NCBI RefSeq assembly: GCF_021869535.1
Contig: NW_026262626.1
Coordinates: 5,518,001-5,582,000 of the forward strand
Source of the DNA: Mytilus californianus
Taxonomy: Eukaryota
Direction: 5' to 3'
DNA length: 64,000 nucleotides
Position 1 is the stretch's first letter, and the number at the start of each line of letters is the position of its first letter. Under the pieces are notes generated by a model. The model had not been told where the DNA came from, made no database searches, and saw only the letters and a program-made list of their open reading frames with translations. Position numbers and translations under genes: made by a program. This document shows positions 26,730 through 56,593 of this stretch, in pieces.

Positions 26730-28344
26730 ATGGATGTTACATATAGGAGTACCAAACTGTTAGTGGTTATCTGCTTTGCAGTATTAAATTCTAAACCTGG
26801 AATTGGTAGGTCATATTTAAACAGATTCAAAATTTCGAATGATTGTGCAAGACGCTATTTTTTTTTGTTACTGGCTAAAAGTTCCTTTGATTACTTCCTT
26901 ATTTGAAATTTATCGTTGTGAATTTACAATATCAATTTTAAACTATTTGTAAACATGAAATACTACCATACGCTTAACCTGTTAACAATATAATATATCA
27001 ACTTAGTTAAAGCAGATTTTGTATGCGGTTAAAACGGTGTATTTCCAACATGAATACCATGGGAATGAATATAGATCCTAAACAAATTAATAATATTATA
27101 TACCAATTCTCTTAAAATTCAGTTGATAAATCTTTTTGAAATTTGATCAATTCTGGTTCTTTTAAGATAATTTTATTTGACTTTTAACAGTAAAATTAAA
27201 AATAGCATCATATTCATAGATGGTAGTCTTTTTTAATAGAGCTTGGATAAATCAAAATTATGGGAAAATAAGTGTCCTTGTTTTTTAAATACAAGTTTAA
27301 AAAACTAAAATTTCCGGAGGAAAAGGGAAGTCGTTGATTTATCATATAAAAATAAATGAAACAAAGATAAATAAATAAGTGTTTATATGTAAGAAAAGTA
27401 TATTCGGAATAACAAAAATGTGGAAATATTTAGTAAAAGTGCTTTGATGCTTTTTTTTATTACATTGAGAAATGCAGAGATTACAAATTTTTTAATGCAT
27501 TGACTAGAAAAAACCTAGAGTAATAAACTACCTGTGTTAAAGAAGGGGGAAATGACACAGCGACTACGCTTAAGAGTTAAGTGTTTTGTCTTATAGTTTT
27601 TCGGTTTACCAATCAGTTGAGATTACAATTAGTTATTTTTCGTATCTTTCAGCATTGAAACATGTCAATGACATTGCAGCAGCAACTGTCCTTCAGACAA
27701 CAACCGACCAAAACACGTCAGATAGTTCTGTAACGACTACAAGAGACTCAAACATTACCGATCAGACAACGGAACTCTCAAATGTTACCATTCAAACAAC
27801 GATAACTCCAAATATTACGAAAGAACCAACAACGGAAAATTCTAACATTACTATGGAGCCAACAACTCAAAATTCAAATATTACCATGGAACCCATAACT
27901 AAGGCCTCAAACGTGACAGTAGAACCAACAACGAAAAACCCAAATGTTACAGTAGAACCAACAACCAAAAACCCAAATGTTACAGTAGAACCAACAACTA
28001 AACACCCCAATGTTACAGTAGAACCAACAACAAAAAACCCTAATGTTACAATAGAACCGACAACTAAACACCATAATGTTACAGTAGAACCAACAACAAA
28101 AAACCCTAATATTACAATAGAACCGACAACTCACCAAAGAAATACGTCTACACCAATGTCAACTCCAAAAACGAAACCACATTCAACAACACATGCAATG
28201 CCGGCCACCACAAAGAAGTATAAATTCAATGGTGCAAGTTTTGGAGGAGGAATTGCTTTGGGAGTGGGAGTATCAGTTGTTATAATACTGATTGTTTACT
28301 TTTTGAAATGCAGAAAAAGTGATGCGGGATACGACAGAATGTGA
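26730..28344 (+). CDS. Mucin-like type I membrane glycoprotein A (CD164/porimin-like); 2 exons, 255 aa
   Basis: Exon 1 26730-26805 (MDVTYRSTKLLVVICFAVLNSKPGI, donor G|GTAGGT); exon 2 27653-28344 (acceptor TATCTTTCAG|); phase-1 junction, 768 nt in frame. Thr-rich stalk, KFNGASFGGGIALGV TM segment, tail KCRKSDAGYDRM*. Confidence 0.85.
27811..28140 (+). repeat. Coding 33-bp (11-aa) tandem repeat x10 in mucin A
   Basis: Units NITKEPTTENS, NITMEPTTQNS, NITMEPITKAS, NVTVEPTTKNP (several), NVTIEPTTKHH, NITIEPTTHQR. Confidence 0.9.
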
Positions 28345-28749
28345 AGCTAACAATATTTGCTTATAATTATAATTTTGGTAATCTCATTTTCTTAATACTG
28401 ATTTTATATATAAGACCATTCTAGTGAATCATTATGTCATTGTCCTGCTATGAATTCCAATTACCATTTGGGGAAAAAAGGAATTCATTATACAAAATCC
28501 CTTAAGCCAACTGACAAAACTCAAAGAAAAAGAACAGTGCTTTTATTTTTGTACTTTATATTAAAGTCAAAGTGAGACCTTCAACACAGGACTACAGTTC
28601 ACACCTCGATGGAAGTTCACGACGGATCAACAATTTCGGGAACACAAGTGAAATATTACTTTTACCAATGTATTTATTTTTATATGATTTACAATTTGTT
28701 TTTGTTATATAAAATATTACTTAAACAAAGTTTTGTTAGCTTTTTATCA

Positions 28750-29090
28750 ATAGTTGATTGATTGTTTTTTTTTACTCTCAGTGACAAATATTTCAGGACG
28801 AGAACAACTTAACAATAAATACAACAGGTATAGGTCCAACAATAGGGGATCGACTGACATATTGGGCGGGAAATAATACTGCCACTGGAAAATGATAGGG
28901 ACAGAACCTTAGTCTTGAAACAGGCCACTTACGGACCACCAAGAATTTGCAAGGGTTCTTAACGTGCAGACAGCGTGGCACTTTCTCTACACAAGGCTTC
29001 AGATTTAACGTCCCCATTCTGAACGGACGTTGCTGCGAATTTATACACCACGCAAACCTCAACGAACGCCCACATTTTGCAAGGGTTTTA
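28750..29090 (-). mobile_element. SINE-like dispersed repeat (reverse orientation)
   Basis: TGAT-type tail and a CAGTG(A/G)CAAATATTT...GGACG...AGAACAA block shared with 33550-33845; both carry ACGTCCCCATTC. Confidence 0.45.
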
Positions 29091-29373
29091 CTGCCTGTCG
29101 GAAGAAGACCAATGATGACCCTATTTCTATACACCAGCCATCCTTGTGATTTTTTTATCATTAGTTATGCATTACTATTTTTGTATCATTTTTATTTTTG
29201 TATCATTTTTTATAAAACGGACACCAATCCTAAATCATACTCATATGATATGAAAACAAACTCGTTGATGCAACTTCCTGGTATGGGTATGACAAGGGGG
29301 TGCAACATCTTGGTCACTTCGCAAGGTATGCAATCTGTTTACGTTACCAGTTTTGCATTGTTTATAAATGTAA

Positions 29374-29676
29374 GGGAGCTACCATTTGATTTTTATGGGG
29401 GGAAGGCTAGGATGAAATTTAAAAAAATAGGCAGGACAGGAGTTTTGAGTAAAACAAAAGGCAGGATGAGACACTTTGCAAAAAAAAAAAAGGCAGGATG
29501 ACAATTTATGTAAAAATAAGTCAGGATAAACTAAAAAAAAAGTCAGGACCGAATAGAGTGAAAAATTAAAAGGCAGGACAGAGATTACGACTAAAAAAAA
29601 TACATACAAAATTTTTTATCCTTGCACCCCTCTCCCCCCCCCCCCCCCCCCCCATAAAAATCAAATGGCAGCTCCC
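29374..29676. mobile_element. PIF/Harbinger-like MITE, second copy
   Basis: TAA|GGGAGCTACCATTTGATTTTTATGGGG ... CCCCATAAAAATCAAATGGCAGCTCCC|TAA; the interior is the reverse orientation of 8125-8597. Confidence 0.85.
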
Positions 29677-32504
29677 TAAGAATGTTATTCTACCCTTTAC
29701 ATAGTTTTCCTTCGCAACGTTATCACCATTTGATTGTAATTCTTTGCTTTTTCGCTATAACTTTTGTCCGGTGATTTATCATGCAATTATATACTAGAAC
29801 TATAAGGACAGTTCATTCTAATTGTTTAAACGACCGGTTTTGGTCGAATACGTGATTACTTAGGTGTCCGTCGGTCTGTTGTCTGTCATTAATTTTTCAA
29901 AGAGAGTTCAACTCTGAAGCTAGTATACTGAAATCATTCAAACCAATCAGACGTCATGATTGATTCTCGCTATATAAAAATGTTCTGACTCTATTATTGC
30001 AGGCATGACTACAACTTCTAAAAATAAAATTGGGGTAAAATGCAAGTGTATAGTCTTATATCTTGAAAATTATAATAGATTGAGAAAATCCGACAGGTGC
30101 CTAAATGTTAAGAATGTCAAGATCTACCTGCTCTTCATTTATTCAAAAAAAATCAATGTGTATCTATAAAGGAGTTATTGCCCGTAAATGATGATATTTG
30201 TTTTACTAATTTTAGTAGTTTTGCTCATCAACGTGAAAACTACAGTAGATAGACAACGCTGAAAAAAAAATTTGATCATTACTATACGATCTACAAAAAT
30301 GTCAACATGACTGAATATACAAATTGAGCCCCAAAGAAGAGTTATTGTCCTTAAATGACTTATGGTTACACAATTTATCAGTTTCGCCTATTATATTAAA
30401 CACGTTTGGGTTATCTGACAGTGTGAATGGTGTATATGTCTATCGAGAAATTGAAGGAAGCAAAATTATGGAAAAGATGCAGACATTGAATATGGAATTA
30501 ATACATTTGTAAATCCCAACAAAAACAGAAGTGAAACTGTCCTAATTAGTTTCTGGGAAAATGTGTCTTTCAGATCATTTTATGACCTATACTATCAGTT
30601 CAAGTTTATATTGCGGGAAACGATGTGCTGTTTTTTTTTAAAGAATCCTATATATTTAGATTGAGCCATCATAACTATATCGAATATCTTTTTGATGAGG
30701 CCTGATTTATACATATTAAATTAATTTTGATACATAATAATAATTTTAGGTTAACAACAGGAAAACTTTTAATAGATTGCAATGCACAAAGTTCAAGCTC
30801 TTATAACTATTGGTGAATTACGGTGTCATAAAATCCTGCATACATCCATATAAGTGTGTCATTATTATGTTGAATACATGTAAGCATGGTGAAAATTTCG
30901 CTCTGCATAACATCGTATCGCTTTATTATATTGATTCAGTGGTATCAAAACTACATCATGTACAATACATTTCCCGGCAAAAATAAATTTAAACAGACAA
31001 CACATAAATCTATAACATTTTGCATTATCTCCGCCAACATTTATGTCAGCAGGTATATGGGCTTTTTCATTGCGCTTAACCATTTTATTAACTTTTTAAC
31101 CAATATATTTCTTTTGCTAGGCATCCAAATAAAATAATGGTTAAATTTGATACACTAGAAAACTGTTACCTGCAATATGATGCATGGTCCTTTGAAATGA
31201 TATTTATAACCAATTGTACTGCCTAATGAAGACAACTAAGTAAAAATGGTCATTCGTTTATATTTCTGTAAAAGGAATCAACTCACAAGTCGTAACAGAC
31301 TTCCAAAACTTTACATTGTTCATGCAACTTTTATCATTATCTGGTAAAATCAAAACTTGTGTTAATAGTAATCACTGCTCCATTTTAATACCACAAACTA
31401 ATGTGTGCAAGCCTATGTTCATAATCTATTTTTATATGCTGTGTTTTGCAGACTATTGTTTAATAGAAAAACAAAGGATATGGGTATCAATCCATGACGA
31501 CACAAAATCAGTACATGGACAGCAACAAAAAAAAACAATAAGCAAAGGAACAGTGCTTTTATTGCTGTTCTTCATCTCAAAGTCACAGTGAGGCCTTCAA
31601 CACGGAGGTCTCTTTTGCATCTTCCTTCTCTCTTTTATATCTTCCTGCATGTAACAACAATTCTCCACTACCTTTTCTATTACAAATTAAGCTAAATATC
31701 AAATTTCTTTTAATCAACACAACGTATCGGATTTGATCCTCCTCAAAATCATGAATAATTGGATTTAAAATTTAGAAATTAATTTTATAGCTGTAAAAAC
31801 CTTCCTTTATATAATGTATACAAGGCCTTTGAGTCTAGGCACAAAAACTGTTCAAAGATGGAATAAAAATGGGAAAAAAAAATACATTCTGCACTTTTAA
31901 GCTCACCTGACCCGAAGGGTTATGTGAGGTATTATCATCTCTTCTCTTTCATCTTCAATTTTCACATTTAAACATACTGTAAAACCACTTTGACCAATTG
32001 GAACCAACTTGTCAAGAATCTTCATTGGAAGATACTTACGAGTTTGAATTTTTTGTTTGGATCAGACATTCAAAATGGCAAACAGGACCAAAATGTTTGA
32101 GATTTTAAAGATCTTTTGAGTAAACACTTGGTTTATTAAATTGAGACATTACCGGAATGACCCAAAGACAGTCCTTTACTGATTTTGTGTTTTTGCTGTC
32201 AATCCATATCAAGATGGTCATCACCATGGTACAAAGTTCAACATACAACCTTACCAATAATACACACAGAAACCGTCGCACACATTTAAACCAAATCCAA
32301 CAATTACTATCCAAACTGATCTGTGTCCATACTTGTTACAATAATAAAATTTATTGTCAGAATGCGTTCTTTCTTGTTCGTATTTTTTTCTGTAAACTGT
32401 TTTAACTGTACGTAGTACTTGAAAACCTTGACAATGTAACAAGATGAATTTAAAGTGAAATAGAAGGAAATTATGCATCGTTTGTACTCCAAACTTGTAT
32501 ACTG

Positions 32505-33144
32505 AACAGATATATCATGTTATGGAGGAGTATTTGCGAAAAATACCAGTCAAGGGACGGTGAAATTTCCCAAGCCGGTAGGCTAGGGAAATTTGGTCCC
32601 AAGACTGGTATTTTTCGCAAATACCCCTCCATAACATGATATATCTGTTTAATTACACCGAATAGATTTTGATTGAAACTGTCTGTACATGTGAAGGGAA
32701 ATCGTATAGTACCGCGGGAATTATACATGTACTTATAAGTGTTAGTGCTGTCTTTTTGTGCATAACGTCATGGTATCTATATGTGTAAACGTCATTGTTA
32801 TTCCATCATTAATTCGTTCATTTGTATAGACATTTTTTCCCCCTCTTTATATATATATTTCTGACAGTTTACGGTTTAACTCAATCAATAGTGCTTAACC
32901 ATGTTATCGGGAAAAAGTGAGAAAGGTTCCGAATAATTTTGGCGGGAACAGGCTCGCGAGGGTAAAAAGGGAATATCCAAAATGGCAAATACCACGGCCG
33001 AGAGGGGAATTTGAGGCAAATTCACCGGCAGTGGTGAAAAAACAGGCAAATTCGTTTGAAATGAGGAAAAAATGTTAGAATATGCGAGAAATACACTGGC
33101 TAACAACCAATCAAAATCCGGCATTCTTATATAAGGTGTAATTA
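32505..33144. mobile_element. Unclassified foldback element: long hairpin plus a segment bounded by 10-bp inverted repeats
   Basis: 47-bp arms (1 mismatch) at 32505-32649 with further inner pairing; TAATTACACC at 32650 and GGTGTAATTA ending 33144. Confidence 0.55.
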
Positions 33145-33549
33145 TATTAAAAATAAGCTTGACTGTTGCGAATTAAAATGGTTTTCTTGCGAAATAAGAG
33201 TAAATCGACTTGATCGCTAGTAGTTTTACCAGACAAAGCCAGTTCTGCGCTCGTAATGGACCGATTCACGTAACAACAACAACAAAACACAAACACGATT
33301 CAGAAGATTACAACAGGAAACGATACCTATACTATGCAATACCCCGTTACTATACTTAGGAATTGACATTTGTTTGAACCGAGAACAGAGCTCTCACTCA
33401 CTTCATATGCATATTTTGTAAGAAGCGCTTTGAGCATCGACAACGAAACTTCGAGGTAGATAGTCCTACAATTGCTACAGTCATGAGCATGTCGATGTCT
33501 TATATGTAGTACAGCGGGAAAAAGTGAAAACATGGGGGCTTTTTGTATT

Positions 33550-33845
33550 TCATTGATTGATTATTGCTTTCTTGACGTCCAGTGGCAAATATTTTATGCA
33601 TGTTTAGGACGACGAGAACAAACCATCAATCAAAAGTACGTTTATCAGGATCCATGACTGGAAATTTGGGTTGCCAGAGGATAACGACGGTATGTAAGAT
33701 AGGAACAGAAATATTACCTTGCAGCAGGATACTTGCGGATCATCAAAGAGTTGTTGCAACAGTTTTTAACGTACTGAGAGGGTGGAACTCATCCTGCATG
33801 ATCCATCGGATTCTACGTCCCCATTCCGACTAGACGTGGCTTCAT
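33550..33845 (-). mobile_element. SINE-like dispersed repeat (reverse orientation)
   Basis: Shares tail and internal blocks with 28750-29090. Confidence 0.45.
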
Positions 33846-34690: not shown

Positions 34691-36377
34691 ATGATGAAAG
34701 TGTGTTTCGTAGTAGCCTTTTTTATTGTGTCTGGTTGTGTGGCACTTCCAACAAATGGTAAGATAAAAGACCACTGAAAATTTCAAACGAGTTATCATAC
34801 CCTTTTTTTCCCTCCCCCTTTATCCTTTAATCTTAAAACCTGCTACCCTTAATGTATTCCGATGTCATTGAGACATTATTCCTTTTAACTTTAACATTAT
34901 CTTTCTACTATTTGACGTTCGTAAAGTATATAAGCGTTATTTAATAAAAGGTCAAGAAGAAAATTAGGATGAATCGTATAAGAAAGGGAATGAAAGCCGA
35001 CTTTCTTTCTATTGAAAATCGGGCAATTACGTGTTACGAATTGTTTCACATTTGTTTTTATGTCGGGACCTTTTATAGCCGACTATACGGGTTTTTTTCT
35101 CATTTTTGAAGGCTGTACTGTTGCATTAAATTGCTTACACGCACTTCATTTGAACCTAAGTGGATAGATGTCTCATTGGCAATCATATCACATCTCTTTA
35201 CTTTTACATAATGTAGATATGACGCGTGCATCTGTGCTTTTAAATTTTCTACTTGTTATAGTACTTACGACCGCCAAAAAATTAATACATATAAAGTAGA
35301 GCCTCTGGAGGTTTCGTTCGTCCAATAAGTCAATGAATCTCGTTGAAGCAACATCAAATGAAAGATCTTGCGGTATGAAGAAGAAAAAGAATATCTTATT
35401 CAAAGCACAGGCATTTTTTTGAATGGAGTCCCCTTTTTCTATATTTTTTTTGTGTTTTAATTTTTCAAAGGTAAATATTCCTTAATATTTGAACTTATTT
35501 ACTCGTATTTAATATGTTCTTATTGTGATCCATACGATTTTACAATAACTTGTTTATTTATGATGCCTCTCTGTTCTTATTTTCACGGCTATTCTTATTT
35601 TCCATGTGGAAAATCAACCGTGAATAGAGTGGCATCATAAAACCTACTGTTATTGCAAAATCGTACGAATAACAGCCATAACAAATCAAATAAGTAAAAT
35701 TAAGCTAAAATATGTAAAAGGAATAATTACTCGTGATTTGCATTTTACAAATTATGTATGCATATGTTGCAGGGTAAATCGACGGTAGGTTGCCATTGGA
35801 CATTATCTTATACATTTACTCTAATCTTTCAGGAGCGCCAAATCCATCTTCTGCCGATATGACCAAAAAAGCAACGGTAGTGTCGTCTCAAACTAACGAT
35901 ATGACAACAGTAGTAACAACAGAACCACAACAGACAACAAAACCACAACAGATGACAACAAATAGTCAAACTACAGTCAACCCCGTCACCTCAATGTCAA
36001 TGACAACAGAGTCAATGATGACAAATAATACTATGCCACCTAGCTCAGAAACCACTGCCAGTCAAATGTCTACACAATCCTCTAACACTTCTACTGTTAC
36101 AATGATGACAGACGAACCATCAAACATGACGTCTGCTGGACCAATGACAACGATGCCGGCTGCTGTGACCACAGCGGGAAAGGTGACGGCGCACCATCCA
36201 ACAACACATACACCGAAACCAACCACACAAAAACCAGAGACAACAACCAAAAAATCTAAATTTCAAGGAGGAACGTTTGTCGGAGGAATGTTTTTGGGAA
36301 TAGCACTGGCGTGCATTATAACAGCTATTGTATACTTTCTTAAATGTAAAAATCAAAGCTATGGGAAAGTCAATTAA
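34691..36377 (+). CDS. Mucin-like type I membrane glycoprotein B (CD164/porimin-like); 2 exons, 203 aa
   Basis: Exon 1 34691-34757 (MMKVCFVVAFFIVSGCVALPTN, donor G|GTAAGA); exon 2 35833-36377 (acceptor AATCTTTCAG|); phase 1, 612 nt. Thr/Met-rich stalk, KFQGGTFVGGMFLG TM segment, tail KCKNQSYGKVN*. Confidence 0.87.
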
Positions 36378-39924: not shown

Positions 39925-40200
39925 TGTGTGTGTGAATGAATGAACGGATGTTTGAGTGAGTGAGTGAATGAACGGATATTTGAGTGAGTAAATGTGTGGA
40001 TATTTGAGTGAGTAAATGTGTAAATGAATGAGTGAATGGGTGAATGAATGAGTGAGTAAGTGTGTAAATGAATGAATGAGTGAGTAAGTGTGTAAATGAA
40101 TGAATGAATGAGTGAGTGAGTGCATGAATGAAAGGACGTGTGACTGAGTGAGTGAGTGCACGAATGAAAGGACGTGTGACTGAGTGAGTAAGTGATGGAA
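39925..40200. repeat. (TGAA/TGAG)n microsatellite followed by a decayed GA-rich tract
   Basis: Tetranucleotide arrays seen directly; they explain the His/Ser/Leu/Thr ORFs on the minus strand. Confidence 0.9.
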
Positions 40201-40849: not shown

Positions 40850-41590
40850 CTTCCTTCTTAAGACAGAGAACACTATGGACTGAGATAGTCCTGCCTCCTC
40901 CAACCGACTTCGTAAGAGAGTGAACACTTTGAGGGGAGATATTCCTGCCTCTTCCAACCTACTTCGTGAGAGAGTTACACTATGGACTGAGATATTCATT
41001 CCTAAACCAACCACCTTTGTGAGATATTCCTGTCTCATCCAAGAAACAGTGTACATTATGGACACAGATGTTCCTGCCTCTTCCAACCCACTTCGTGAGA
41101 GAGAGTGTACACTATGGATTGAGATATTCCTGCCTCCTTCAACCTACTTCGTGAGACAGTGTACAGTATGGACTAAGATATTCCTGCCTCATCCAACCTA
41201 CTTCGTGAGAGAGTGTACATGATGGACTGAGATATTCTTGCCTCCTCCAACCTTCTTGGTGAGAGAGTGAACACTATGGACGGAGATATTCCTGCCATCT
41301 CCAACCTACTTCGTGAGAGTGTGTACACTACTGATAGAGATAGTCCTGTTTCCTCCAACCTACTTCGTGAGGCAGTGTACACTATGGGCATATATTCCTG
41401 CCTCCTCCAACCTACTTGGTGAGAGACTGTACACTATGGATTGAGATATTCCTGCCTCCTCCAACCTACTTCGTGAGACAGTGTACATTATGGACTGAGA
41501 TATTCCAGTCTCATCTAACCTCCTAAGTGAGACAGTGTACACTATGGAAAGCGATATTCCTACCTCATCCAACCTCTGTCGTGAACCAGT
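40850..41590. repeat. 54-bp minisatellite, ~13 copies
   Basis: Consensus GAGAGAGTGTACACTATGGACTGAGATATTCCTGCCTCCTCCAACCTACTTCGT. Confidence 0.9.
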
Positions 41591-43049
41591 GTAAACGGAC
41601 CCGGACCTTTTCCTGCGATATCTGAACGATAACGGTCAAGAAAAGCAATGAAATGTGCAAAATTGAAGATTTGGGTATACGTCAAGGGTAAAATTTCCCG
41701 TTATCTTCAACTCGAAAAATTTACATCAAGGACGGAAAATCTCAACACCATTTCCATTTCTAATCCCCAACCCGAAAAAATCACCCCCAGTACTCACGGT
41801 CTTGCACTTGTTTCGGTGTTAGATTCTTAATAACAAGCTTCAATAGACCGTCTCATTTGTCTTAAAGCGTCGATCTTTGTCTATTTTTAGTATGACTCTC
41901 ATTTCTATAAATTCATCCTTCCATATTATTCTGCGTTCCAGGTGGTCTGTCCATACTGGAACCAATATATAAAAGGACTTGTGCATTAGTACCAGGTTAA
42001 TTTGAAGTAATGTTTTCTGATGGTATTTCCTACCATTCTGATTACATGAATCGTAGTCTTGCCATATGCTTTGGAATAAACTTTTTAACATGGTTGTGTA
42101 CACTCATTATAACTATTTGGTCTATATATGGTACTTTCTGTTTTTCATGCAACATTTTCCTTGTTCAAAAGGAGATTGCTTTAAAGAAAAAGCAATGAGT
42201 CATATCTAAACGTATATGAGTTTTTTTTATAAATTTCTCAGATAAACAATAATGAAATAAAAACTTCTACCAGAAATAGACGTTTATCACCCCCAGTTTT
42301 TGTTGGGGTTCGAGTTGTTCAACCTTTAGTTTCTATGTTGTGTTTTGTATACTGTTGTCTATTGGTCATTTGTCTTTTTTTTTTTTGTCAAAGCGTTGTC
42401 TATTTTTCACCCACTTATAAGTTTGAATATCCCTTTGGTTTCTTCCGCCTCTCTTTGAGTATGTTTCCGTTACCGTATACTTTACAATTAATGTCCATAG
42501 TTTTCCGTTGTTAAAAGAAGTACAGACCTCATATACCAAAATATAGTGACTAGCAATTTTTTTTATATTATGATTTCAAAATACTTTTAAAAATCGTATC
42601 ATTTTAACAGTTGATATCTTGTTCTGTTACTATTTTATACATGGACATGTTTCTGAACTTTTTAAATATGGAAATTAACAATGTATACACTTCCGTTGTT
42701 AATAGTCATGTCTTAACATTCACCAGGGGCGTTGGAACCGGGAGTGGGTGTGGGCACGGGGTCCCGACTTCTTGGCAAAAATATATTTAAAAAAAAAGAA
42801 AATGATAGATGAAACTGACTAACTACTAGACTAATAGGCTATAGATGGTTTTGTTTACTTGTCACTTTCAGAAGTTTGCCCCCTCAACTTTTCAATCCAC
42901 TCTTACGCCATTATTTGTGATACTTAGCTCATATCTGTTAAATATTACGTTAATTATCAATAAGTATATAAATAATCTAAAGTCAATGAACATCACAAAG
43001 TCCAGTATTGTAATTTTGAAATGTAGATAAAATATATCTACACGCAGCA

Positions 43050-46000
43050 ATGAAGATGAATATTTTAAAAGTCATCTTGTCGATCTATTTTTCAGGTAAG
43101 TCATTTAAAATGTAATTCAGTTTGGGTTGTGAGGACTTCATTCATTGTTTATTGATTGTCATTTTTCTTTTTCCAAAAACCAGTTTTGTACATATTCTTT
43201 AAAAGGTTCCTCGGACATTTAAAACATAAAATATATTCAAATTTGCCTGCCGTATAGAATTAGAAGACTGGAATAATTGCCAATGAGACAACTTTCTACC
43301 AGTGACCAAATGACGTTGAAGTTAGCAATTATAGGTCACTCTACGGCCTTCGACAATGAACAAACCCCATACTACATAGCAATCTATAAAAGGCTCCGAA
43401 ATGATGAATGTAAAACAATTAAAACGAGAAAACTATCAGCCCGATCAATTTACAAAACAATAAACGAAAAGCAAATATGATATACAGAAACAAACTACAA
43501 CCATTGAATTACAGGCTCTCGACTTGGGATAGGCACATACAGAATGTGGTTAAACATGTTTGCGGGAGTCCATCCCCCTAACCTGGCACAGTGGTTTAAC
43601 AGCACACCATAAGAACAAACAAAAACAAAATTAGTTTAAAAAGGCTTGAATCATCATAACTGGTTTTTTTTTTATCTAACAGTCTAACTGATTTTACACA
43701 TCTGACAAACAGATTTTTACTAATAGATATTAGCACGCTACAAAGACAATGCATGCAATGTTGTATGGTATTGACAAGGGGAAAAAGAGTTGCATTTGTT
43801 AAAACCTCATTAAAAGTGCCATTATAAAAAGTCCTAATGATGTCATGATTTAGGTGCAGTTTCAAATATTTTATTGATAAATCAAATTGGTGGAAAACAG
43901 GCATAGTTTTTTTTATATAGATTAGACCGATGGTTTTCCTGTTTGAATGGTTTTACACTAGTCATTTTTCGGTCCCTTTTATAGCTTGCTGTTCGGTGTG
44001 AGCCAAGGCTCCGTGTTGAAGGCCGTACTTTGACCTATAATGTTTTACTTTTACAAATTGTGACTTGGATGGAGAGTTGTCTCATTGGCACTCATACCAC
44101 ATCTTCTATCTATGAAGTACCTATATGTACCCCCTCCAATAAAAAGATGAACGAGACACAGATAAAAATTAAAGAACATGTATCAACTCATATGTTTGTA
44201 GTACGTGTCATAGATAATGATTGTCTATATGATCCAGTCTACCTAAAATGAATCCAGGAACTTTATATATACTAGATATTTATACTATCTATATAAATAC
44301 TAAATAAATTCAACTGAACCGGATACATTGTAGGCGGGGTGTAACCATTACATTTAAGCACATGGTCAGCAACAAATATCACACATTATACCATTTGACA
44401 GTCTGTCTTATTAGATATACAATTCAAAGATTCTAGATGCCTATGTTTCTTTCATTAATAACAATAGTATTCATTCAGGTAAAGGCAATATATACAAATA
44501 CATAATAAGTTTTAGAAACTTAGCTAAATACAACCTTAAAATATAGCAACGGTTGTGACTTTAAACAACTTAGATTTTTTTTCATATGGGGTCCTTATAG
44601 TCTTGATAATGAAATAATTTATAATTCAATTTTACAGCAATATATAGTATCTAGGAACCACAGCTTAAAAACATTCGTATAAAAAGCAATCTAATAAAAT
44701 ATGAAATCTGCATCTGACATTGATCTGAGTTTACTCATTAGGTGTTTTGTTTACTTCAAACTTAAATTTAATTTTTGAATTCACATGAATACCTTTTACA
44801 TGATCTGGCAAAGCATTCCAGTTCTTACTGCGACTTAAAAATAAAGAAGAAGATTCTACACATTTGACATTTGGAACATAAAAACTGTAAGCAGTGTTCT
44901 AGTATTCCTATTCGAGGAAGTTCTTGAAAAACCATTTTTTAAATATTCTGGACATTTGTCGTGAAAAACATTGAAAACATGATTCAGACGAAGTTGTTTC
45001 ACTCTGTTACAAACATTCGATAATCCCAATTTTTCAAATTCATTTACATTTATTCGTTTTCTCTGAGGAAGATGTAGTATAAGCCTTATAACTTTATTTT
45101 TTATTAACCTGAAGCTTGTTTGTAAGTTTCTTGGATAAACCTTCATACCAACAAGCACATGCGTAATCAAGATGGCATTGTATTAATGTAGTACACAATT
45201 TTTTTTTTCTAGATTGTTGATACAAACATTCTTTAATATATCTATATGAAATTTAAGCCGCTGATTGGCCTTCTTTATTATATTATCAACAACCTGTTCA
45301 CCAGATTAAAATTTGTCCAACATGATACCTAAATATTTCACGTTTGATTTACTCTCAATTTCAATAGTATATCATTCAACAGAAAAATCACTTTCATTAA
45401 CATTTTGAAGTTTTCTTTTTGGTCCTAATAAAATACTCCCAGTCTTTCATAAATGTAGAACCAATTTATTATCAACAAGCCAATCTTTAAATGATTTTAA
45501 CGTAAGTGATAGCTTTCTAGAAATGATTTTTGGATCTGAATGTGAAAAAATTTCATACAATGATTACAATAATTTTTTTATGACAATAAAATAATACAAT
45601 ACAACATTATAGAGCAACGAATAGTCAGTGCATGTACATTAGAGAGAAAACTTAATAGGGGAGACAATCAAGTAATATGTAAGGATTATTTCCCTTTGAA
45701 CAATATCTAATATACTTTCAAAATAATAAAGTTAAGCATTATAATGTGATAAAATATTTGCTTTTTATGTTTGGGCTTTATATCTCTTCTACGTTTTTTT
45801 TAGGGATTATTACAGTTACTGATTCTTCATCATATGGTCCAACTATAGCTGACGTTGATATATCAAATGACACTTCCACTCAGTCAACCCAAGTTGCAAC
45901 ACATGGAATAACAGTGTCATCTTATGGCGCATCTTCCGATTCATCCGAAGGTACCACACAAGGAAACTCAACCAATATACCTTACATAACTGATACGACA

Positions 46001-46342
46001 GAAAATCCGAACCACTCGTCTATTACAACAGCCGTTAGGACGTCAGGTGCTCCCAAAACATCAAATCCGTCGGCTGTTCCAGAAACGTCGAATCCGTCAA
46101 CTGTTCCAGATAAAACAACAATTACTGTACCATCTACATCGAGTAATCCAACAACGACACATGGTCATTCGTCGGGCGATGGTTCTGGATTTAATGGGTT
46201 ATCCTTTGGAATCGGTATTCTGGCTGGTGTTATAGCAACATTTTTGTCGATACTTCTTGTTTTTCTTTATCGTCGTCGGCATCCATATGAAACTTTATCA
46301 AATTTAGACTCAACAGCTTCAATAAACTTTCTGAAAGATTGA
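43050..46342 (+). CDS. Mucin-like type I membrane glycoprotein C (CD164/porimin-like); 2 exons, 194 aa
   Basis: Exon 1 43050-43095 (MKMNILKVILSIYFS, donor G|GTAAGT); exon 2 45804-46342 (acceptor CTTCTACGTTTTTTTTAG|); phase 1, 585 nt. Ser/Thr stalk, FNGLSFGIGILAGV TM segment, tail YRRRHPYETLSNLDSTASINFLKD*. Confidence 0.8.
44740..45545 (-). mobile_element. Decayed CR1/L2-type LINE ORF2 3' fragment in the intron of mucin C
   Basis: Remnants DWLVDNKL, VKYLGIMLD, IKKANQRLKF, NKVIRLILHLP, RVKQLRLNHVF, CPEYL and WNALP, with stops and frameshifts. Confidence 0.75.
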
Positions 46343-49899: not shown

Positions 49900-50760
49900 C
49901 GTATTTATCATGTTTATAGATCGGTTACAAACCCAAAACGAAAGTTACGTAATGGAAATCTAGGCGATAGCAATACATCGGAATGCCCTCACGGTCATCG
50001 CGATGTAAAAAGGTGTGCACCGAGGATTAATATTGGGCCCGTTACTTTTTAATCTTCTACTTTATTAAAAAGGGTAACTTATACAACTATGCTGACGACA
50101 ACACTTTGTCTTTCAATTCTCCAAAATATGAGGAACTTGCTACAGTTATAAAATCTGAGAGCAATATTTTGATTGACTGGTTTCAATTGAATGTATGCAA
50201 GTAAATCCTGACTAATCCAAGGCTATTGCAGTTGATAAAAACTCAGCGGAAAAAATGTATTTCTTTTAAAATTGGAAATAATTATATGTCTTGTGGAGAA
50301 ACAGTCAAGCTTTAAGTGTAGATATAGATTTGATGGTAAATTTTAATAACCATATTAAAACCATATGTGAAAAAAAGCAGTTCAGCAACTTAATATCTTG
50401 AAGAGAATTGGTAGAAATCTATGTAAACTAAGCAAACTTACTATTTTATACATTTATATTGTTAAACTTTAACTTTTGTCCCTTGTCTTGGCACTTTTGT
50501 GCTGTTGTCGACACAAAGAAAATAGAAAAAAAAATCAAGAAAGGGCATTACGATTTGTATATTGTGATTATGTCTCTACATATTACGAAGAGCTTTCAGT
50601 CAAGGCAAAAATACCTAGCCTACATCCAAGGAGGAAAAAACAATGGCACTGGCACCTTACAAAATTTCACATGATTTTATCAGACTTAATTAATACACAA
50701 AGGTCATTATAAGTAATTTCAGATACTCTAATCTCTTATAGAATAGTAAAGCATGTTCCT
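49900..50760 (+). mobile_element. Decayed CR1-like LINE reverse transcriptase fragment
   Basis: GV..GLILGPLLFN, YNYADDNTL, LIDWF, QQLNILKRIG, NFNFCPLSWHFC and QERALRFVY remnants, with frameshifts. Confidence 0.85.
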
Positions 50761-51246
50761 GTGTTGCATGAAGATATTGACCACACCGTGTTTGTTATTT
50801 TTTTTTTAGTTTATTCAGCTTCTTGAGTTTAACTTATTTTAAGTGCTAATAGTTTTATAGTTGCTAAACTATATACTTTTATGTTTGACTACTCCTTTTA
50901 ATGTGACAAATGTGTATGTATAAACTATTGTATGTCTTGTGTTGTCCTATTGTGCCTGTACTCACTGTAATATAATAGGCATGTCTATAATATATTATGT
51001 TTGTCGTTTCAAAAGCTTTATGAGTAATTAATATCTATATTGTTATTGTGAAAATTTATTGCATTTAGTCTTTAATTCTTTGCTGAGAAGGAGTGTTATC
51101 AGACTCCAAATGACGTTCTATGTCGTTGCAAGTCTTCTGTTTTATGCATGATTAGTTTGGCGCGGTTCATCTTACTGTTTGCTAACTTGAGTATGGGCAA
51201 ACGCTTGGTGTTTTAAATGTTGGCGTTCTTACGTTAATATTGTATC

Positions 51247-51395
51247 CAGGGGCGCATCCAGCCATTTTTAAAAGGAGGGGGTCCAACCAATGATAAAGGG
51301 TGTTCCAACCATATGTCTCCATTCAAAAACATTGATCGTAAAAAAAAGGGGGGGAGTTCCAACACCCGGAACCCCTCCCCCTGGATCCGCCACTG
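51247..51395. mobile_element. MITE with CAG(G/T)GGCG termini and imperfect 5-bp TSD
   Basis: GTATC|CAGGGGCGCATCCAG ... CTGGATCCGCCACTG|GTACC. Confidence 0.6.
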
Positions 51396-51629
51396 GTACC
51401 ACGGAAAATTTAGTAACGCATCGGTCTATAGTTTATTAATCAAATAGTTTGATTATCGTTAAATTGTTATCTTTTAATAAATTGACAAGATTAAAATGCA
51501 TAATCTTCTACGTAACAAATTATCTATCAGTAAAGTGAAAAATGAATGATTACGTAAATTTCGTTATCATCTTATATGACACATGACCGTGAGGACAGTA
51601 ACAAAGTACAACACTTTTCACCATCCACC

Positions 51630-54239
51630 ATGAATTGCAACTGTCAACTTTTATGTATTGTCATTTTAGGCGCCTGTATATCAATAGTTAATGGAGCTAC
51701 AGTATCAACAGGTAAGCAGGTATCAAGTGGATTCAAGAGCGCAATTATTTGTAATGCATTGTTACATAGGGTACCACTGGTGTTCCATATTTTATTTCTT
51801 GAAGAATAAACAAACTAGAAAAAATGGGTTGCAGTTCATGTTACTAGAAATGTCAGTGTTGAATATCAGTCAAAATAAAAGTATATAGTGATGTTGTAAA
51901 AGTTGACCTTAAATGCAGTGGAAAAAACGTCTATTTTTTTCAGTTAATGAGGAAGGCAAATCTTTAATGGCTCATACGTAAAAAACGTTGAATATATTTT
52001 CTACACATTTTATAATACATGTGTATGAATTTAATTTTCTGTTGTTTTTTTTTAACCCATAATTCCAAACCTGTATCATCCAGTATCACCAAGAGTCGCA
52101 CAAGGTTTTATTCTGAGTACCATCTGATAATCGCAAGAATCGAACCTCTGTAATTTAAAATTTCGAAGTATTCTGCTTCAACTTGAACAGCGTTCAATTT
52201 GTTGAACCTTCAAAATAAAAATAAGTAGATGTGGTATGATTGCCAAATGAAATAACTATCCCCCCACAGTCCATATCCATATGAAGTGTTTGTAAGCAAC
52301 TACAGATCACCGTAGGCGTACGGCCTTTAACACTCGGAGCAAAACCCATACCATATAGTCCGCTTTTTAAATGTTATGTCGGGGCCTCTCAAATATTTAT
52401 ATGTTCAAAGAATTAAGCCAATACAAACAGATTCAAATATATGATAGGAGCATCTCTATACCGTGTTCTCGAAAACTCATGGTCCAGTCAATCCTGACCA
52501 CCAAAATACAGGTAACCAATTCCAAGTGCAGTGGTGGTCCTGATGTCCGACTAAAAGTTTGTGATGGTTTTATTCTTTTTTAAGCTTGCTGGTACATAGT
52601 ATAGCTTCTTAGTACGATGTATATCAATACTTGATATGGAACCATATAATTATTATTCAAATTGGCCTTATTTAATTTAAACCTGTGGAATTAATTGATA
52701 GAAAATTGTTACTGCAAATACTGAACTACAAAATTTTCACTGGAACCATTAGATTTGTAGTCTTTATGACCACCGGGCTAAAAAAGATTTCGAGAACACT
52801 GTTTTAATTGGTATCTTATTATACTCCCTTTTAGTAGAAGGGCTATTGAAGTAATCTCGGCGTCGACATCTCAATAATTTAGTAACAAACACTATAATGC
52901 TACATGATTGAGAAGCTGTTTTTATGAGAATGTTAAATTATTGAAGAAACTGTTAAACACTCCCTTACCGATTTTTCTGGTCAATTTATTCAAAAAAATA
53001 TAGGCCGGAAAAATCAGATTTTAATAAAATTGAGATTGGAAATGGGGAATGTGTCAAAGAGACAACAACCCGACCATAGATCAGACAACAGCCGAAAGCC
53101 ACCAATGGGTCTTCAATGCAGCGAGAAACTCCCGCACCCGGAGGCGTCCTTCAGCTGGCCCCTTAACAAATATGTATACTAGTTCAGTGATAATGGACAC
53201 CATACTAAACTCCAAATTATACACAAGAAACTAAAATTAAAAATGATACAAGACTAACAAAAGCCAGAGGCTCCTGACTTGGGACAGGCGCAAAAATGCG
53301 GCGGGGTTAAACATGTTTTTTGAGATCTCAACCCTCCCCCTATACCTCTAGCCAATGTAGAAAAAACAAACGTACAACAGTACGCACAGTAAAACTCAGT
53401 TCAAGAGAAGTCCGAGTCCGATGTCAGAATAGGAAACAAAAGAAAATAAACAAAATGACAATAATACATAAATAACAACAGACTACTAGCAGTTACTGAC
53501 ATGCCAGCTCCAGACCTCAATTAAACTGATTGAAAGATTATGTCTTCATCATATGAATATCAGGCACAATCCCTCCTGTTAGGGGTTTAGTATTATACCG
53601 TCATATAATATATGAGAAAAACATAACCCGTGTCATGCCAACAACTGGTTTTAGAATAAATATGTTTAATTCCGATGCAAAGACCCTATAAGTGAATCAA
53701 TATTAAAGCCAAAATATGCAATCTTTAATGACCTGACAACAGTATCGTAACTATATCCCTTCTTAGTAAGTCTGTTTAAAGGTTTTGTTAGCTTTTGAGG
53801 TGAATACTGACATTTTTGTCCTTTGTAAATGTATCAATCATACCTTATTTTTAGATTTACCTTGATTTTTTCAGCTGCTGTCTCTGTTACTAGTGGCAAT
53901 GATACATCTATCGTACCAATAGAAACGACATCAAACCCTGTTACCATGACAACAGGAGCAGGGACAACATTAAATGCTCAGACAACACAACCACCAAAAA
54001 CCGGGGATACTACACAGCCATCAAAGCCCACGGAAACTACACAACCTTCCACAAAACCCGCTGCCTCTACAGGAACAACACCAAAGAAACCAACCACAAC
54101 CATAAAACCAGGACGGAAATTTGACGGTCCATCTTTTGGTGGCGGTTTTGGTTTAGCTGCTGGCTTAGTAATAATATTTGGAATTGGATACTGCTGTTAT
54201 ACAAGACGAAAAACAAGTGGTGGATATAGCCAGTATTAA
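51630..54239 (+). CDS. Mucin-like type I membrane glycoprotein D (CD164/porimin-like); 2 exons, 148 aa
   Basis: Exon 1 51630-51711 (MNCNCQLLCIVILGACISIVNGATVST, donor G|GTAAGC); exon 2 53875-54239 (acceptor TTTTTTCAG|); phase 1, 447 nt. Thr/Pro stalk, KFDGPSFGGGFGLAAGLVIIFGIG TM segment, tail CCYTRRKTSGGYSQY*. Confidence 0.87.
53030..53790. repeat. Interspersed repeat in the intron of mucin D
   Basis: Contains CCTGACTTGGGACAGGC..GGCGGGGTTAAACATG, found in reverse complement at ~46820-46865 and partly at ~59465-59490; boundaries approximate. Confidence 0.55.
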
Positions 54240-56499
54240 TAATTTAGTGAATGCAATAAGAATGCAATGTTTATTCAACCATATTTTCTGGTTAATATGT
54301 GAACATTTAATGTTTTGGAGTTTTGCCATCCAAATTGAGCATCTATAGAACACGGCAGTTAAAAAAGGATCTCATTTCGTCCATTGTTATTCTTGTTTTG
54401 CCATATATACTTGGCACCATGAATTCGGTATCAATGGTGCATTTTTATTAATTAAATGTTTTACGTTATTGATTTATGTACAATTACATTTAGTGCATCA
54501 GCGAAGCCAAAAAGGGGATTGAAAAGTTTCAGTGCAATAGTGTTATAAAATGTGAAAACTTCCTGACAAATACGCTACAAAACTTACCAAAATAAGTCAC
54601 CAAGCATGTTTTACGCCCAACCATCCACATCTTTGAAAAATATGCTGTTTTCACTTTGTATGATTTTAAAAGTGTTTTTTTTAGAATTTTGAACGGAGAT
54701 GACTATCTTATTCGTTTGTTTCTTATGGGGTGATGTCTTTCTTTTTTCTCCGTTTTTTAGAGAGAAAAAAAGCAGTATGTATGCCTTTTGATTACTTTTG
54801 TGGATTGGTTGCTATTCAGTTGAGGTTCCTGTGCACATCCCTTTTTATTCATACAATTTTTCGATATGTTGCTTAAATTTCAAATTGTTTGCTGCTCTTA
54901 ATTTAGTTCCCTCTTCATGCAAAGCGCAATTCAGATATATGACATATATACATGTACATGTAGGGCATATCTCATTTTTCAATCTCCAGTTGCTTCACTG
55001 TTCCACTGTAATTTAGTCTCAATTTGCAGGTAAAGGGATATGGTCGCTTTCCCCTGTATTTGTTTGAAATTGAAATAGTCTAAATAATCTACCTTAAATA
55101 TAATTTAACAGTTGAAACATTATTTCGTTTTTCGCAAATCACAAAAAGGAATTTCCAACACACATAATATATATATATATGTATGATCAAGGATTTGTAC
55201 AGTGAAATATCCGGAAGTCACGGACAAAATAGTATTAGAAATAACTTAAATTATGAGTCTGGTGAAGAGGAACCCTAGGGATCCGGTACTGGAAATCAAC
55301 TCTAAGTAACTCTAAATATACAAATCCTTGATATGATCAATTAGAAGAGTAAAACTGCTAATTCTTCCGTTGCACCTACTGTCTATCTTTTCGACTATTT
55401 CTTTTGGTCTATTTCCTTCATTTGATGAATGACTTTTTGTGTAAAAAATTATTAAATTTGAATGCAAGAAACTGTATTTCTGGGCATGTCCTTAGTTAGA
55501 AACCTGGATCGTCAGTCGTTAATTTTCCCATGTTATATCTTAATAATTTTCGTTATTTTCATTTCTGTTGAGTGTTTCTGTTTCATTTATTCACAACTTT
55601 ATAGTCTCGGGATGATTTATAACTTGACATATAATGTAGACACCTGTCTATTGTTGGAGAATATTTTCTATCCTCAAGATGCGTTTTGGTTATTTTTGTC
55701 TTTGGGCGGTTTCTGTCTCATTTACATGACCCCCGGGCCTTACATGTACGTATACCCCATACCTCTTTTTACTGATTCTCTTTGGGAATTCCGTACTTTA
55801 CCGTGATGGTTTACACTTGTCCGGAAATCGTGATTTAATGATTATCTATTTCTTTAGATCCGGGAAAGAATGTTTTATTTTTTTGGGGAATTTAGGATTC
55901 AACGTTTGTTATCCAGGAATTCGGGATGAGATGCCGGATGACCCCCACCCCCCTTGTTTACCGATTTTTTTATAATTTATCATTGACCTATACCTAGATA
56001 AGATATAAGCTACTTCTACTGTAATATCGCATTGCATGGATAAAAGCAAGAAAACATAAAAATGATATTTACAGACATTTAAACTAAAAAAATAGAAAAA
56101 AATAAACAGTAGAGGAAGTTCCATCACTTAGTTCCATGAGTCTTCAATTCTTCAGTCCATGATGCCCAAAGCCCCGGTGCTAATTAAGATATAAACTAAA
56201 TGGATATTTACAGAATCAAAAACACTGTATCTCATTCTACCTAAAATGGTCTCAAATGGTCGGTCTATCGATGATAAAAATTCGACAACGAAAGTAATAG
56301 AAAATCGCTCTTAGATTTCCCGCGCAAAAACTAATGTTATTGAACATAATCTGGTACCTCGTCTTATCTCGTGAAGAGATTAAACCAGGCTAGACCAAAA
56401 CATCCGAGATCTTCCGAACAAAAATTTACGTCAGCGGAAACTAAATCGAAAGTTGAAAAGTCGCACTACAATCGCAGAAGTTCCTGTCGTCAGAAGTTT

Positions 56500-56593
56500 A
56501 TGACAAGTGTAAAGATGTCGATCCCTAATTTTGTCAGTGTTATATTGATATTCTGTTTCACACTGTCGACCTTTCCTACCATTAATGGAGAAC
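56500..56593 (+). CDS. Candidate signal-peptide first exon of a fifth secreted/membrane protein gene (downstream exon not found in window)
   Basis: MTSVKMSIPNFVSVILIFCFTLSTFPTINGE followed by a phase-1 donor C|GTAAGT, the same layout as exon 1 of mucins A-D. Confidence 0.55.

What the first reader, a model, noticed from the sequence alone, without database searches (positions are those of the whole stretch)
26730..56593. Tandem cluster of four (probably five) divergent two-exon CD164/porimin-like sialomucin genes
Seen: four same-strand genes spaced 8-9 kb apart. Each has a signal-peptide exon, a phase-1 GT-AG intron, and one exon encoding stalk, TM and tail; every spliced CDS is a multiple of 3. 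The stalks are unalignable, but the juxtamembrane motif is shared: KFNGASFGGGI (A), KFQGGTFVGGM (B), GFNGLSFGIGI (C), KFDGPSFGGGF (D). Established: this resembles the F-D-x-x-S-F-x-G-G motif preceding the TM of CD164/endolyn and TMEM123/porimin, whose vertebrate genes are multi-exon. Inference: a lineage-specific, fast-diverging array of cell-surface or lysosomal mucins, possibly in mucosal or immune roles. Such genes are easily missed because exon 1 is tiny and exon 2 is low-complexity.
Basis: partly seen in the sequence, partly recalled or inferred. Interest (0 to 1): 0.85.

Follow-up and report, generated by a model that had tools for sequence, protein, structure and literature searches.

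The report
Mussel cluster of CD164-like sialomucin genes
Four neighbouring small genes in the California mussel genome encode sugar-coated single-pass membrane proteins that are real, divergent relatives of the CD164/endolyn sialomucin; at least three are already in the public annotation as "uncharacterized", so this is a useful naming result, not a new kind of gene.

Summary
Four same-strand, two-exon genes (A-D) sit 8-8.6 kb apart. Each has a signal-peptide exon, a phase-1 GT-AG intron, and one exon for mucin stalk, juxtamembrane motif, TM and short tail.

The window is Mytilus californianus (GCA_021869535.1). NCBI already calls B, C and D with the same spans and lengths (203, 194, 148 aa). 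They were not missed, only left unnamed. A's status could not be checked.

CD164 kinship is well supported:
- Pfam MGC-24 is the top hit for all four, though only B passes the curated cut-off.
- A profile of the four C-terminal modules retrieves CD164/endolyn from vertebrates and invertebrates; 128 of 150 hits are MGC-24.
- hhalign against canonical CD164 modules gives 98% probability.

They lack the cysteine-rich domain. A, B and C carry a YxxPhi tail signal where CD164 has YHTL; D's Y-S-Q-Y has a non-canonical last residue.

Stalks diverge fast. The module is strongly conserved in B and D (dN/dS 0.03-0.14), while C evolves almost neutrally.

One RNA contig shows D's junction. The "fifth gene" exon 1 is expressed and ends at the predicted donor. 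Its remaining exons lie outside the window and its family is unproven.

The parts
26730..26805 (+). Gene A exon 1: start codon and signal-peptide-like segment, phase-1 GT donor
   Evidence: Sequence only: no RNA, annotation or ortholog check was possible for A.
27653..28344 (+). Gene A exon 2: N-glycan-rich mucin stalk, juxtamembrane motif, TM, and a tail ending G-Y-D-R-M. The stalk has 14 N-x-S/T sequons and a 33-bp x 9.8 coding repeat at 27808-28131.
   Evidence: Pfam MGC-24 at E 5.8e-5, 23.9 bits. The ORF has no in-frame ATG upstream of the stalk, so an upstream exon is required.
34691..34757 (+). Gene B exon 1 (signal peptide)
   Evidence: Matches the NCBI gene call of 203 aa with the same span. 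The splice sites are conserved in M. edulis.
35833..36377 (+). Gene B exon 2: T/M/S-rich stalk, motif, TM, tail with Y-G-K-V
   Evidence: Pfam MGC-24 at 34.4 bits, above the gathering score of 28.5. dN/dS against M. edulis is 0.21 overall and 0.03 in the module.
43050..43095 (+). Gene C exon 1 (signal peptide)
   Evidence: The model is identical to P0166, uncharacterized protein LOC127724091.
45804..46342 (+). Gene C exon 2: stalk, degenerate motif (G-F-N-G-L-S-F-G-I-G), TM, longer tail with Y-E-T-L
   Evidence: Pfam MGC-24 at E 0.0017. Orthologs are intact in M. galloprovincialis, M. edulis and M. coruscus. dN/dS is about 0.8.
51630..51711 (+). Gene D exon 1 (signal peptide). An in-frame upstream ATG at 51576 is used in the M. 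galloprovincialis model.
   Evidence: RNA contig X18 record 9 covers 51632-51708 and continues at 53872.
53875..54239 (+). Gene D exon 2: T/P-rich stalk, motif, TM, tail ending G-Y-S-Q-Y
   Evidence: Pfam MGC-24 at E 0.0056. The spliced RNA contig joins 51708 to 53872, which equals 51711/53875 because CAG occurs on both sides. Module dN/dS is 0.07-0.14.
56515..56593 (+). Exon 1 of a fifth, expressed gene (signal peptide, phase-1 donor). The remaining exons lie beyond the window end.
   Evidence: X18 record 15 (2860 nt, depth 90) matches 56440-56593 and then runs on. Stranded run X21 has depth 8.5 here with the first mate on the - strand. The continuation is absent from the window. The M. galloprovincialis ortholog is called as a 190-aa product.
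53023..53827 (.). High-copy repeat inserted in gene D's intron; absent from another individual's allele
   Evidence: DNA run X7 record 19 joins 53022 to 53828 with 6 other letters between, and depth over the repeat is extreme. Copies also occur in M. galloprovincialis.

Best explanation
This is a tandem array of four paralogous genes in Mytilus californianus. They encode small type I membrane sialomucin-like proteins of the CD164/endolyn (Pfam MGC-24) family.

Shown:
- Each product has a cleavable-looking signal peptide.
- Each has a cysteine-free, Ser/Thr/Pro-rich stalk of 83-190 residues with N-glycan sequons.
- Each has the family's juxtamembrane F-x-G-x-S/T-F-x-G-G motif leading into a glycine-rich TM helix.
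- Each has an 11-24 residue basic tail with a tyrosine motif at or near the C-terminus, aligned with the Y of CD164's YHTL. It fits YxxPhi in A, B and C; D's Y-S-Q-Y has a non-canonical last residue.
- The motif-TM-tail module is under purifying selection in B and D, while the stalks change freely.

Inferred:
- The stalks are heavily O- and N-glycosylated.
- The tyrosine motif is read by clathrin adaptor (AP) complexes, so the proteins cycle between the cell surface and endosomes or lysosomes as endolyn does. There they would present or shield a glycan coat.
- The array arose by local duplication of a CD164-type gene without the Cys-rich domain. The paralogs then diverged in stalk length, glycan type and tail signal.
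For: - Gene structure. Identical NCBI calls for B, C and D. Conserved GT/AG positions in M. edulis and M. galloprovincialis. Spliced RNA contig for D.
- Family, by Pfam: MGC-24 is the top hit for all four, and B is above the gathering score.
- Family, by reciprocal search: a profile built only from the four modules plus one relative finds 156 proteins at E<=1e-3 among 1.84 billion. These include vertebrate CD164 (tail ...NYHTL) and invertebrate endolyn. 128 of the 150 listed match MGC-24, the best at 2.6e-37.
- Family, by hhalign: against canonical vertebrate and bivalve CD164 modules the probability is 98% and E is 1.6e-13, with the tail Y aligned to the Y of YHTL.
- Tail signal: 157 of 182 family modules carry YxxPhi in the last 16 residues, and 124 carry it exactly at the C-terminus. 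In human CD164, YHTL is the endosome/lysosome sorting signal, and its loss strands the protein at the plasma membrane (PMC4510537).
- Constraint: module dN/dS is 0.03 in B and 0.07-0.14 in D, against 0.34-0.62 for their stalks.
Against: - A, C and D fall below Pfam's curated cut-off.
- The ectodomains lack the Cys-rich domain that sits between the two mucin domains of CD164.
- D's tail (Y-S-Q-Y) has a non-canonical last residue. B's and C's motifs are not at the very C-terminus.
- C evolves almost neutrally (dN/dS 0.8, stalk about 1.2), so its function is less certain.
- RNA support is thin. D has one contig at depth 2 and almost no reads in the one raw RNA run read.
- Glycosylation, cleavage of the signal peptide and localisation are all inferred.
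- A tree of the 41-column module does not resolve whether A-D form one clade.
Confidence: 0.78

Rival explanations
1. The four genes are a mussel-specific family of mucin-like membrane proteins unrelated to CD164. The juxtamembrane resemblance would then be convergence or compositional bias from a Thr-rich stalk plus a Gly-rich TM helix.
For: Three of the four are below Pfam's gathering score. The similarity is confined to about 40 residues, half of which are TM. The stalks share nothing.
Against: The reciprocal profile search returns almost only MGC-24 proteins (128 of 150), with the match ending at the protein's C-terminus. hhalign gives 98% probability. The non-TM positions F, G, S/T, F, G, G and the tail Y are the conserved ones.
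Confidence: 0.05
2. The proteins act mainly at the plasma membrane as a glycocalyx, anti-adhesive or pathogen-barrier coat. This would resemble the steric 'SHREK' activity reported for human CD164 and TMEM123. The variable stalks would be shaped by host-microbe conflict, and the proteins would not be lysosomal residents.
For: Stalk length, repeat number and glycan type differ widely between paralogs. The C stalk has dN/dS of about 1.2. CD164 and TMEM123 block virion attachment when overexpressed (PMC8147968). B's, C's and D's tyrosine motifs depart from the ideal C-terminal YxxPhi.
Against: There is no expression, tissue or infection data. The dN/dS values rest on few substitutions and are compatible with relaxed constraint. 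The conserved tail tyrosine argues for regulated endocytosis.
Confidence: 0.3
3. Part of the array is decaying: gene C, and possibly A, would be redundant paralogs drifting toward pseudogenes, not functional genes.
For: C has dN/dS of 0.82 overall and 0.55 in the module, and its motif is degenerate (G-I-G in place of G-G-G). A has no independent support beyond the sequence.
Against: C's reading frame, splice sites, length and tail are intact in four Mytilus species. A's module scores highest against the family HMM and ends in a textbook G-Y-x-x-M.
Confidence: 0.15

Closest known systems
CD164 / endolyn / sialomucin core protein 24 (Pfam PF05283 MGC-24; human CD164, Drosophila Vsg)
   Same: Type I topology, mucin ectodomain, and the F-D-x-x-S-F-x-G-G-I juxtamembrane motif entering the TM. 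The basic tail is short, and its tyrosine motif aligns with YHTL (PMC4510537; PMC3291509).
   Different: - There is no cysteine-rich domain and only a single continuous stalk.
- The tails are G-Y-D-R-M, Y-G-K-V-N, Y-E-T-L plus 14 residues, and G-Y-S-Q-Y instead of N-Y-H-T-L.
- There are two coding exons, against seven in human CD164 and at least seven detected over 38 kb in the Mytilus canonical gene.
Canonical Mytilus 'sialomucin core protein 24-like' gene (M. edulis P0177, M. trossulus P0178, M. galloprovincialis LOC143047520)
   Same: It is on the same chromosome and has the same module. Its last exon encodes motif, TM and tail, and its introns are phase 1 like the A-D intron.
   Different: It carries several Cys-rich domains (26-27 Cys), has an N-Y-H-Q-M or N-Y-H-T-L tail, and spans 38 kb. 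In M. edulis it lies about 0.55 Mb from the array on the opposite strand, so it is not the array's fifth gene.
TMEM123 / porimin and other cysteine-free MGC-24 members (Octopus 'porimin', Anopheles 'integumentary mucin C.1-like', Trichoplax RDD41889)
   Same: A signal peptide, a plain mucin stalk without a Cys-rich domain, and the CD164-type module. 70 of 128 family hits of 120 aa or more have at most 3 Cys before the motif.
   Different: Orthology to vertebrate TMEM123 was not tested and is not implied. The names on invertebrate records are automatic. The mussel genes form a local array with very different stalks.
LAMP-type lysosomal membrane glycoproteins (G-Y-x-x-Phi at the C-terminus)
   Same: Gene A ends in G-Y-D-R-M, and its TM and tail give a weak hit to the Lamp2 TM-segment model (E 0.042). 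A heavily glycosylated luminal domain is expected.
   Different: There is no LAMP luminal domain. The resemblance is limited to the sorting-signal logic, and the hit is below the threshold.

Membership tests
CD164/endolyn family (Pfam PF05283, MGC-24) | Significant match to the family profile | tested here: met
   - MGC-24 is the top Pfam hit for all four. B scores 34.4 bits against a cut-off of 28.5, while A (23.9), C (19.2) and D (17.5) fall below it.
- In the reciprocal profile search, 128 of 150 hits are MGC-24.
- hhalign against canonical modules gives 98% probability, E 1.6e-13.
CD164/endolyn family (Pfam PF05283, MGC-24) | Juxtamembrane F-D-x-x-S-F-x-G-G motif directly before a single TM helix near the C-terminus | tested here: met
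   F, G, F and G are invariant across A-D and P0001. F, S, F, G, G are at least 90% conserved over the 150 hits. C is degenerate at the second G.
CD164/endolyn family (Pfam PF05283, MGC-24) | Signal peptide and Ser/Thr/Pro-rich mucin ectodomain with N-glycan sequons | tested here: met
   Hydrophobic N-terminal cores have Kyte-Doolittle means of 2.2-3.6. Ser plus Thr make up 32-40% and Pro 8-13% of the ectodomain. There are 1-14 sequons. Cleavage and glycosylation themselves are not testable here.
CD164/endolyn family (Pfam PF05283, MGC-24) | Cysteine-rich domain between two mucin domains (CD164 proper; PMC4510537) | tested here: not met
   There are zero Cys in the stalks of A-D. This feature is also absent from about half of the profile-defined family (70 of 128). 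It separates A-D from CD164 proper but not from the Pfam family.
CD164/endolyn family (Pfam PF05283, MGC-24) | Short cytoplasmic tail with a C-terminal YxxPhi (YHTL) sorting motif | tested here: inconclusive
   - The tail Y is invariant and aligns with the Y of YHTL.
- A has Y-D-R-M at the very end.
- B has Y-G-K-V followed by N.
- C has Y-E-T-L followed by 14 residues.
- D has Y-S-Q-Y, whose last residue is non-canonical.
- Sorting function is not testable with these tools.
TMEM123/porimin (vertebrate) | Orthology to vertebrate TMEM123 by tree or synteny | not tested
   The module tree has 41 columns and is unresolved. No synteny data were obtained. The resemblance is only the shared Cys-free architecture.
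Tandem paralog array derived by local duplication | The paralogs are each other's closest relatives, or share flanking or intron DNA | tested here: inconclusive
   Adjacency, strand, exon structure and intron phase are shared. No DNA similarity remains, and the tree does not resolve monophyly. A B-like plus D-like pair on one contig of a more distant organism shows that the duplication is old.

The most novel reading that the evidence does not exclude
The array could be a fast-evolving host-microbe interface. In this reading the constant CD164-type anchor and sorting module carries interchangeable glycan stalks. These stalks diversify under conflict with pathogens or symbionts, acting as decoys or steric antiviral barriers in the manner reported for human CD164 and TMEM123. 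The neighbouring fifth gene would be a Cys-rich CD164-type relative, marking the locus where the stalk-only forms arose by domain loss.
Probability: 0.12. Interest if true: 0.55.

Novelty: new member of a known kind. Interest (0 to 1): 0.3.

Why it matters
The practical value is annotation. At least three RefSeq 'uncharacterized' mussel genes can be placed in the CD164/endolyn family, along with their orthologs. One ortholog is misnamed 'levansucrase-like' and another is a fused model.

The cluster is also a clean natural example of a conserved anchor and sorting module (dN/dS 0.03-0.14) joined to freely evolving mucin stalks. That could be used to study endolysosomal sialomucins in bivalve haemocytes or epithelia.

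It does not reveal a new mechanism or a hidden gene class.

Tried and rejected
- **Fifth stalk/TM exon in the window.** Motif, composition and HMM scans find none. The RNA continuation of exon 1 is not in the window or in the M. galloprovincialis locus held.
- **Fifth gene as the canonical Cys-rich CD164 gene.** Rejected for M. edulis, where that gene lies about 0.55 Mb away on the other strand. What remains is a start-to-start resemblance of the fifth gene's first 36 residues to the Cys-rich CD164-like proteins P0179 and P0180 (45% identity, E about 1e-6 in a 195-sequence set). This is a lead, not a proof.
- **Metagenome scan for the fifth gene's exon 1.** No match.
- **Word-index protein search with B's exon 2.** Only one relative was found and not B's own annotated product, so that tool under-reports these low-complexity proteins.
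- **Module tree.** With 41 columns it is unresolved and was not used for any claim.
- **Rule-based scan for alternative signal-peptide exons.** My thresholds missed the accepted exons of A and C, so it was discarded as uninformative.
- **RNA-run shares on the A-B stretch.** These could reflect expressed repeats, so nothing was inferred about A or B expression.
- **Annotation status of gene A.** It could not be looked up, because a spliced protein has no reference and I did not type it.
- **Single-exon alternatives for C and D.** Both have an ATG inside the polypyrimidine tract. These models are contradicted by the NCBI calls, by the conserved upstream exons in other species, and for D by the spliced RNA contig.
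Full report
**Observation**

A six-frame scan for F-x-G-x-x-F-x-x-G finds four ORFs, all on the + strand. Each ends in a hydrophobic helix and a short tail.

Each upstream exon opens with ATG, has a hydrophobic core and ends in phase 1.

Splicing gives open frames of 255, 203, 194 and 148 residues. The ORFs of A and B have no methionine ahead of the stalk, so they need an upstream exon.

An HMM of the C-terminal module hits only these four ORFs in the whole window, at E 1e-21 to 1e-36. The four units share no DNA similarity except dispersed repeats. The stalks do not align significantly (best E 0.05), while the modules share 6-17 of 36 residues.

**Anatomy**

- The ectodomains are 32-40% Ser plus Thr and 8-13% Pro.
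- They contain no cysteine and carry 1-14 N-x-S/T sequons.
- A's stalk is a 33-bp x 9.8 coding tandem repeat, with a sequon in each 11-residue unit.
- The tails are basic, and each holds a tyrosine motif: G-Y-D-R-M at the very end of A, Y-G-K-V-N in B, Y-E-T-L followed by 14 residues in C, and G-Y-S-Q-Y in D.

**Where the window comes from and what is already annotated**

A profile search returned P0166, 'uncharacterized protein LOC127724091 [Mytilus californianus]'. Its encoding locus L003 is GCA_021869535.1, JAKFGE010000014.1:5551050-5574342. L003 is letter-for-letter window 33050-56342, and P0166 equals my model of C.

The gene calls in that locus are 203 aa at window 34691-36377, 194 aa at 43050-46342, and 148 aa at 51630-54239 (L003 coordinates plus 33049). 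They are only unnamed.

Other species:
- In M. galloprovincialis, the D and C orthologs are 'uncharacterized' or 'hypothetical'.
- In M. trossulus, the D ortholog is called 'levansucrase-like'.
- In M. coruscus, one model fuses the C and D orthologs and carries the name CD164 in UniProt.

I could not look up A's status.

**Family**

- Pfam MGC-24 (PF05283) is the top hit for all four second exons. B scores 34.4 bits (cut-off 28.5), A 23.9, C 19.2 and D 17.5.
- As a reciprocal test I aligned the last 75-85 residues of A-D plus the one relative found. I searched that profile against 1.84 billion representatives.
- The search gave 156 hits at E<=1e-3, almost all ending at the hit's C-terminus. 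They include invertebrate endolyn-type tails (K-F-Y-K-A-R-T-E-R-N-Y-H-T-L) and vertebrate CD164 (K-F-C-K-S-K-D-R-N-Y-H-T-L).
- 128 of the 150 listed hits match MGC-24, the best at 2.6e-37.
- hhalign of the window profile against canonical vertebrate and bivalve modules gives 98% probability and E 1.6e-13. The tail tyrosine lies on the Y of YHTL.

Homology to CD164/endolyn is therefore well supported.

The features of human CD164 used for comparison come from PMC4510537: seven coding exons, two mucin domains around a Cys-rich domain, and a C-terminal YHTL whose loss strands the protein at the surface. Drosophila Vsg is cited as the fly ortholog in PMC3291509.

**How A-D differ from CD164 proper**

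They have no Cys-rich domain. This is not unusual in the wider family. Of 128 family hits of at least 120 aa, 70 have at most 3 Cys before the motif. Examples are Octopus 'porimin/sialomucin core protein 24', an Anopheles 'integumentary mucin C.1-like' protein and a Trichoplax protein.

Mytilus also has a canonical gene with several Cys-rich domains: P0177 in M. edulis, P0178 in M. trossulus and P0171 in M. galloprovincialis. These score 43-46 bits on MGC-24.

In M. edulis the canonical gene spans 38 kb, and tblastn places seven pieces of the protein on it (residues 85-145 were not placed). The three acceptors I read are phase 1. Its last exon encodes exactly the motif-TM-tail module. It lies about 0.55 Mb from the array on the opposite strand.

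**Conservation and selection**

The M. galloprovincialis locus L002 is collinear with window 42.8-64 kb at 70-89% DNA identity. It holds the C and D orthologs and the fifth gene's exon 1. M. edulis L005 holds B, C and an intact but uncalled D. GT/AG positions are conserved in all of them.

Nei-Gojobori dN/dS:

| Gene | Overall | Module | Stalk |
|---|---|---|---|
| B | 0.21 | 0.03 | 0.34 |
| D | 0.44-0.48 | 0.07-0.14 | about 0.6 |
| C | 0.82 | about 0.55 | about 1.2 |

The anchor and sorting module is constrained in B and D. The stalks are free to change, and C is close to neutral although it is intact in four species.

A 60.7-kb contig of a more distant organism has no DNA similarity to the window. 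It carries a B-like and a D-like gene on the same strand about 37 kb apart, so the duplication predates Mytilus. A tree of the 41-column module is unresolved.

**RNA**

- In RNA run X18, a 151-nt contig at depth 2 joins 51632-51708 to 53872-53945. CAG stands on both sides, so this is the predicted 51711/53875 GT-AG junction of D.
- D is almost silent in the raw RNA run X21.
- In X18, a 2860-nt contig at depth 90 matches 56440-56593 and then continues with other sequence.
- X21 shows depth 8.5 over that bin, with first mates on the - strand, the pattern most stranded libraries give for a + strand RNA.

The fifth exon 1 is therefore real, and its donor is exactly as predicted.

The continuation is not in the window. 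The orthologous M. galloprovincialis gene is called with a 190-aa product and an intron longer than 7.9 kb.

The first 36 residues are 26 from the window plus 10 read from the contig's loose end. They align start-to-start with two Cys-rich CD164-like proteins (45% identity). This suggests, but does not show, that the fifth gene is a family member of the Cys-rich type. I put that at roughly 60%.

**Mechanism**

What is shown is the topology-defining sequence features, the family membership and the selective constraint on the module.

What is inferred:
- The stalks are heavily O- and N-glycosylated.
- The tail tyrosine motif engages AP adaptors, so the proteins traffic between the surface and endolysosomes as endolyn does.
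- The differences in tail reflect different steady-state locations: a terminal G-Y-x-x-M in A, internal Y-x-x-Phi in B and C, and Y-S-Q-Y in D.

A surface barrier or decoy role is an open alternative, by analogy with the steric antiviral activity reported for CD164 and TMEM123 (PMC8147968). It does not exclude the trafficking model.

**Verdict**

The CD164 reading is supported. The claims of a 'hidden' gene set and of a fifth member are not established.

This is a new set of members of a known family, in a genome where at least three of the four genes are already called. Whether it belongs to the same family was not tested.

Noticed in passing
window 53023-53827 (and 52215-52246): An 805-bp very high-copy, transcribed repeat sits in gene D's intron, 47 bp before the acceptor. 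It is absent from the allele assembled in DNA run X7, which has 6 other letters in its place. It is therefore a polymorphic insertion. Copies also occur in the M. galloprovincialis locus L002 (6683-7378 and 13836-14185).
   Followed up: partly
window 27808-28131: A coding 33-bp x 9.8 tandem repeat in gene A. Each 11-residue unit carries an N-x-T sequon, so copy number would set the number of N-glycans.
   Followed up: partly
window 39928-40194 and 40854-41593: Between genes B and C there is low-complexity (TGAG/TGAA)n-like sequence and a 54-bp x 10 tandem array. Both give long spurious ORFs on both strands.
   Followed up: no
An Rfam scan of the whole window at gathering thresholds returned no family at all. 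I did not run the permissive scan.
   Followed up: partly
L005 15862-15942 and 20989-21375 (M. edulis OY782965.1): An intact ortholog of gene D (155 aa, conserved GT/AG) is not among the genes called in the M. edulis annotation of this locus.
   Followed up: partly
P0158 (M. coruscus), P0155 (M. trossulus): Two annotation errors in relatives. P0158 fuses the C and D orthologs into one 277-aa model. The D ortholog of M. trossulus is named 'levansucrase-like'.
   Followed up: yes
window 56500-56514: An in-frame ATG lies 15 nt upstream of the fifth gene's start codon. It is ACG in M. galloprovincialis, so 56515 is the conserved start.
   Followed up: yes
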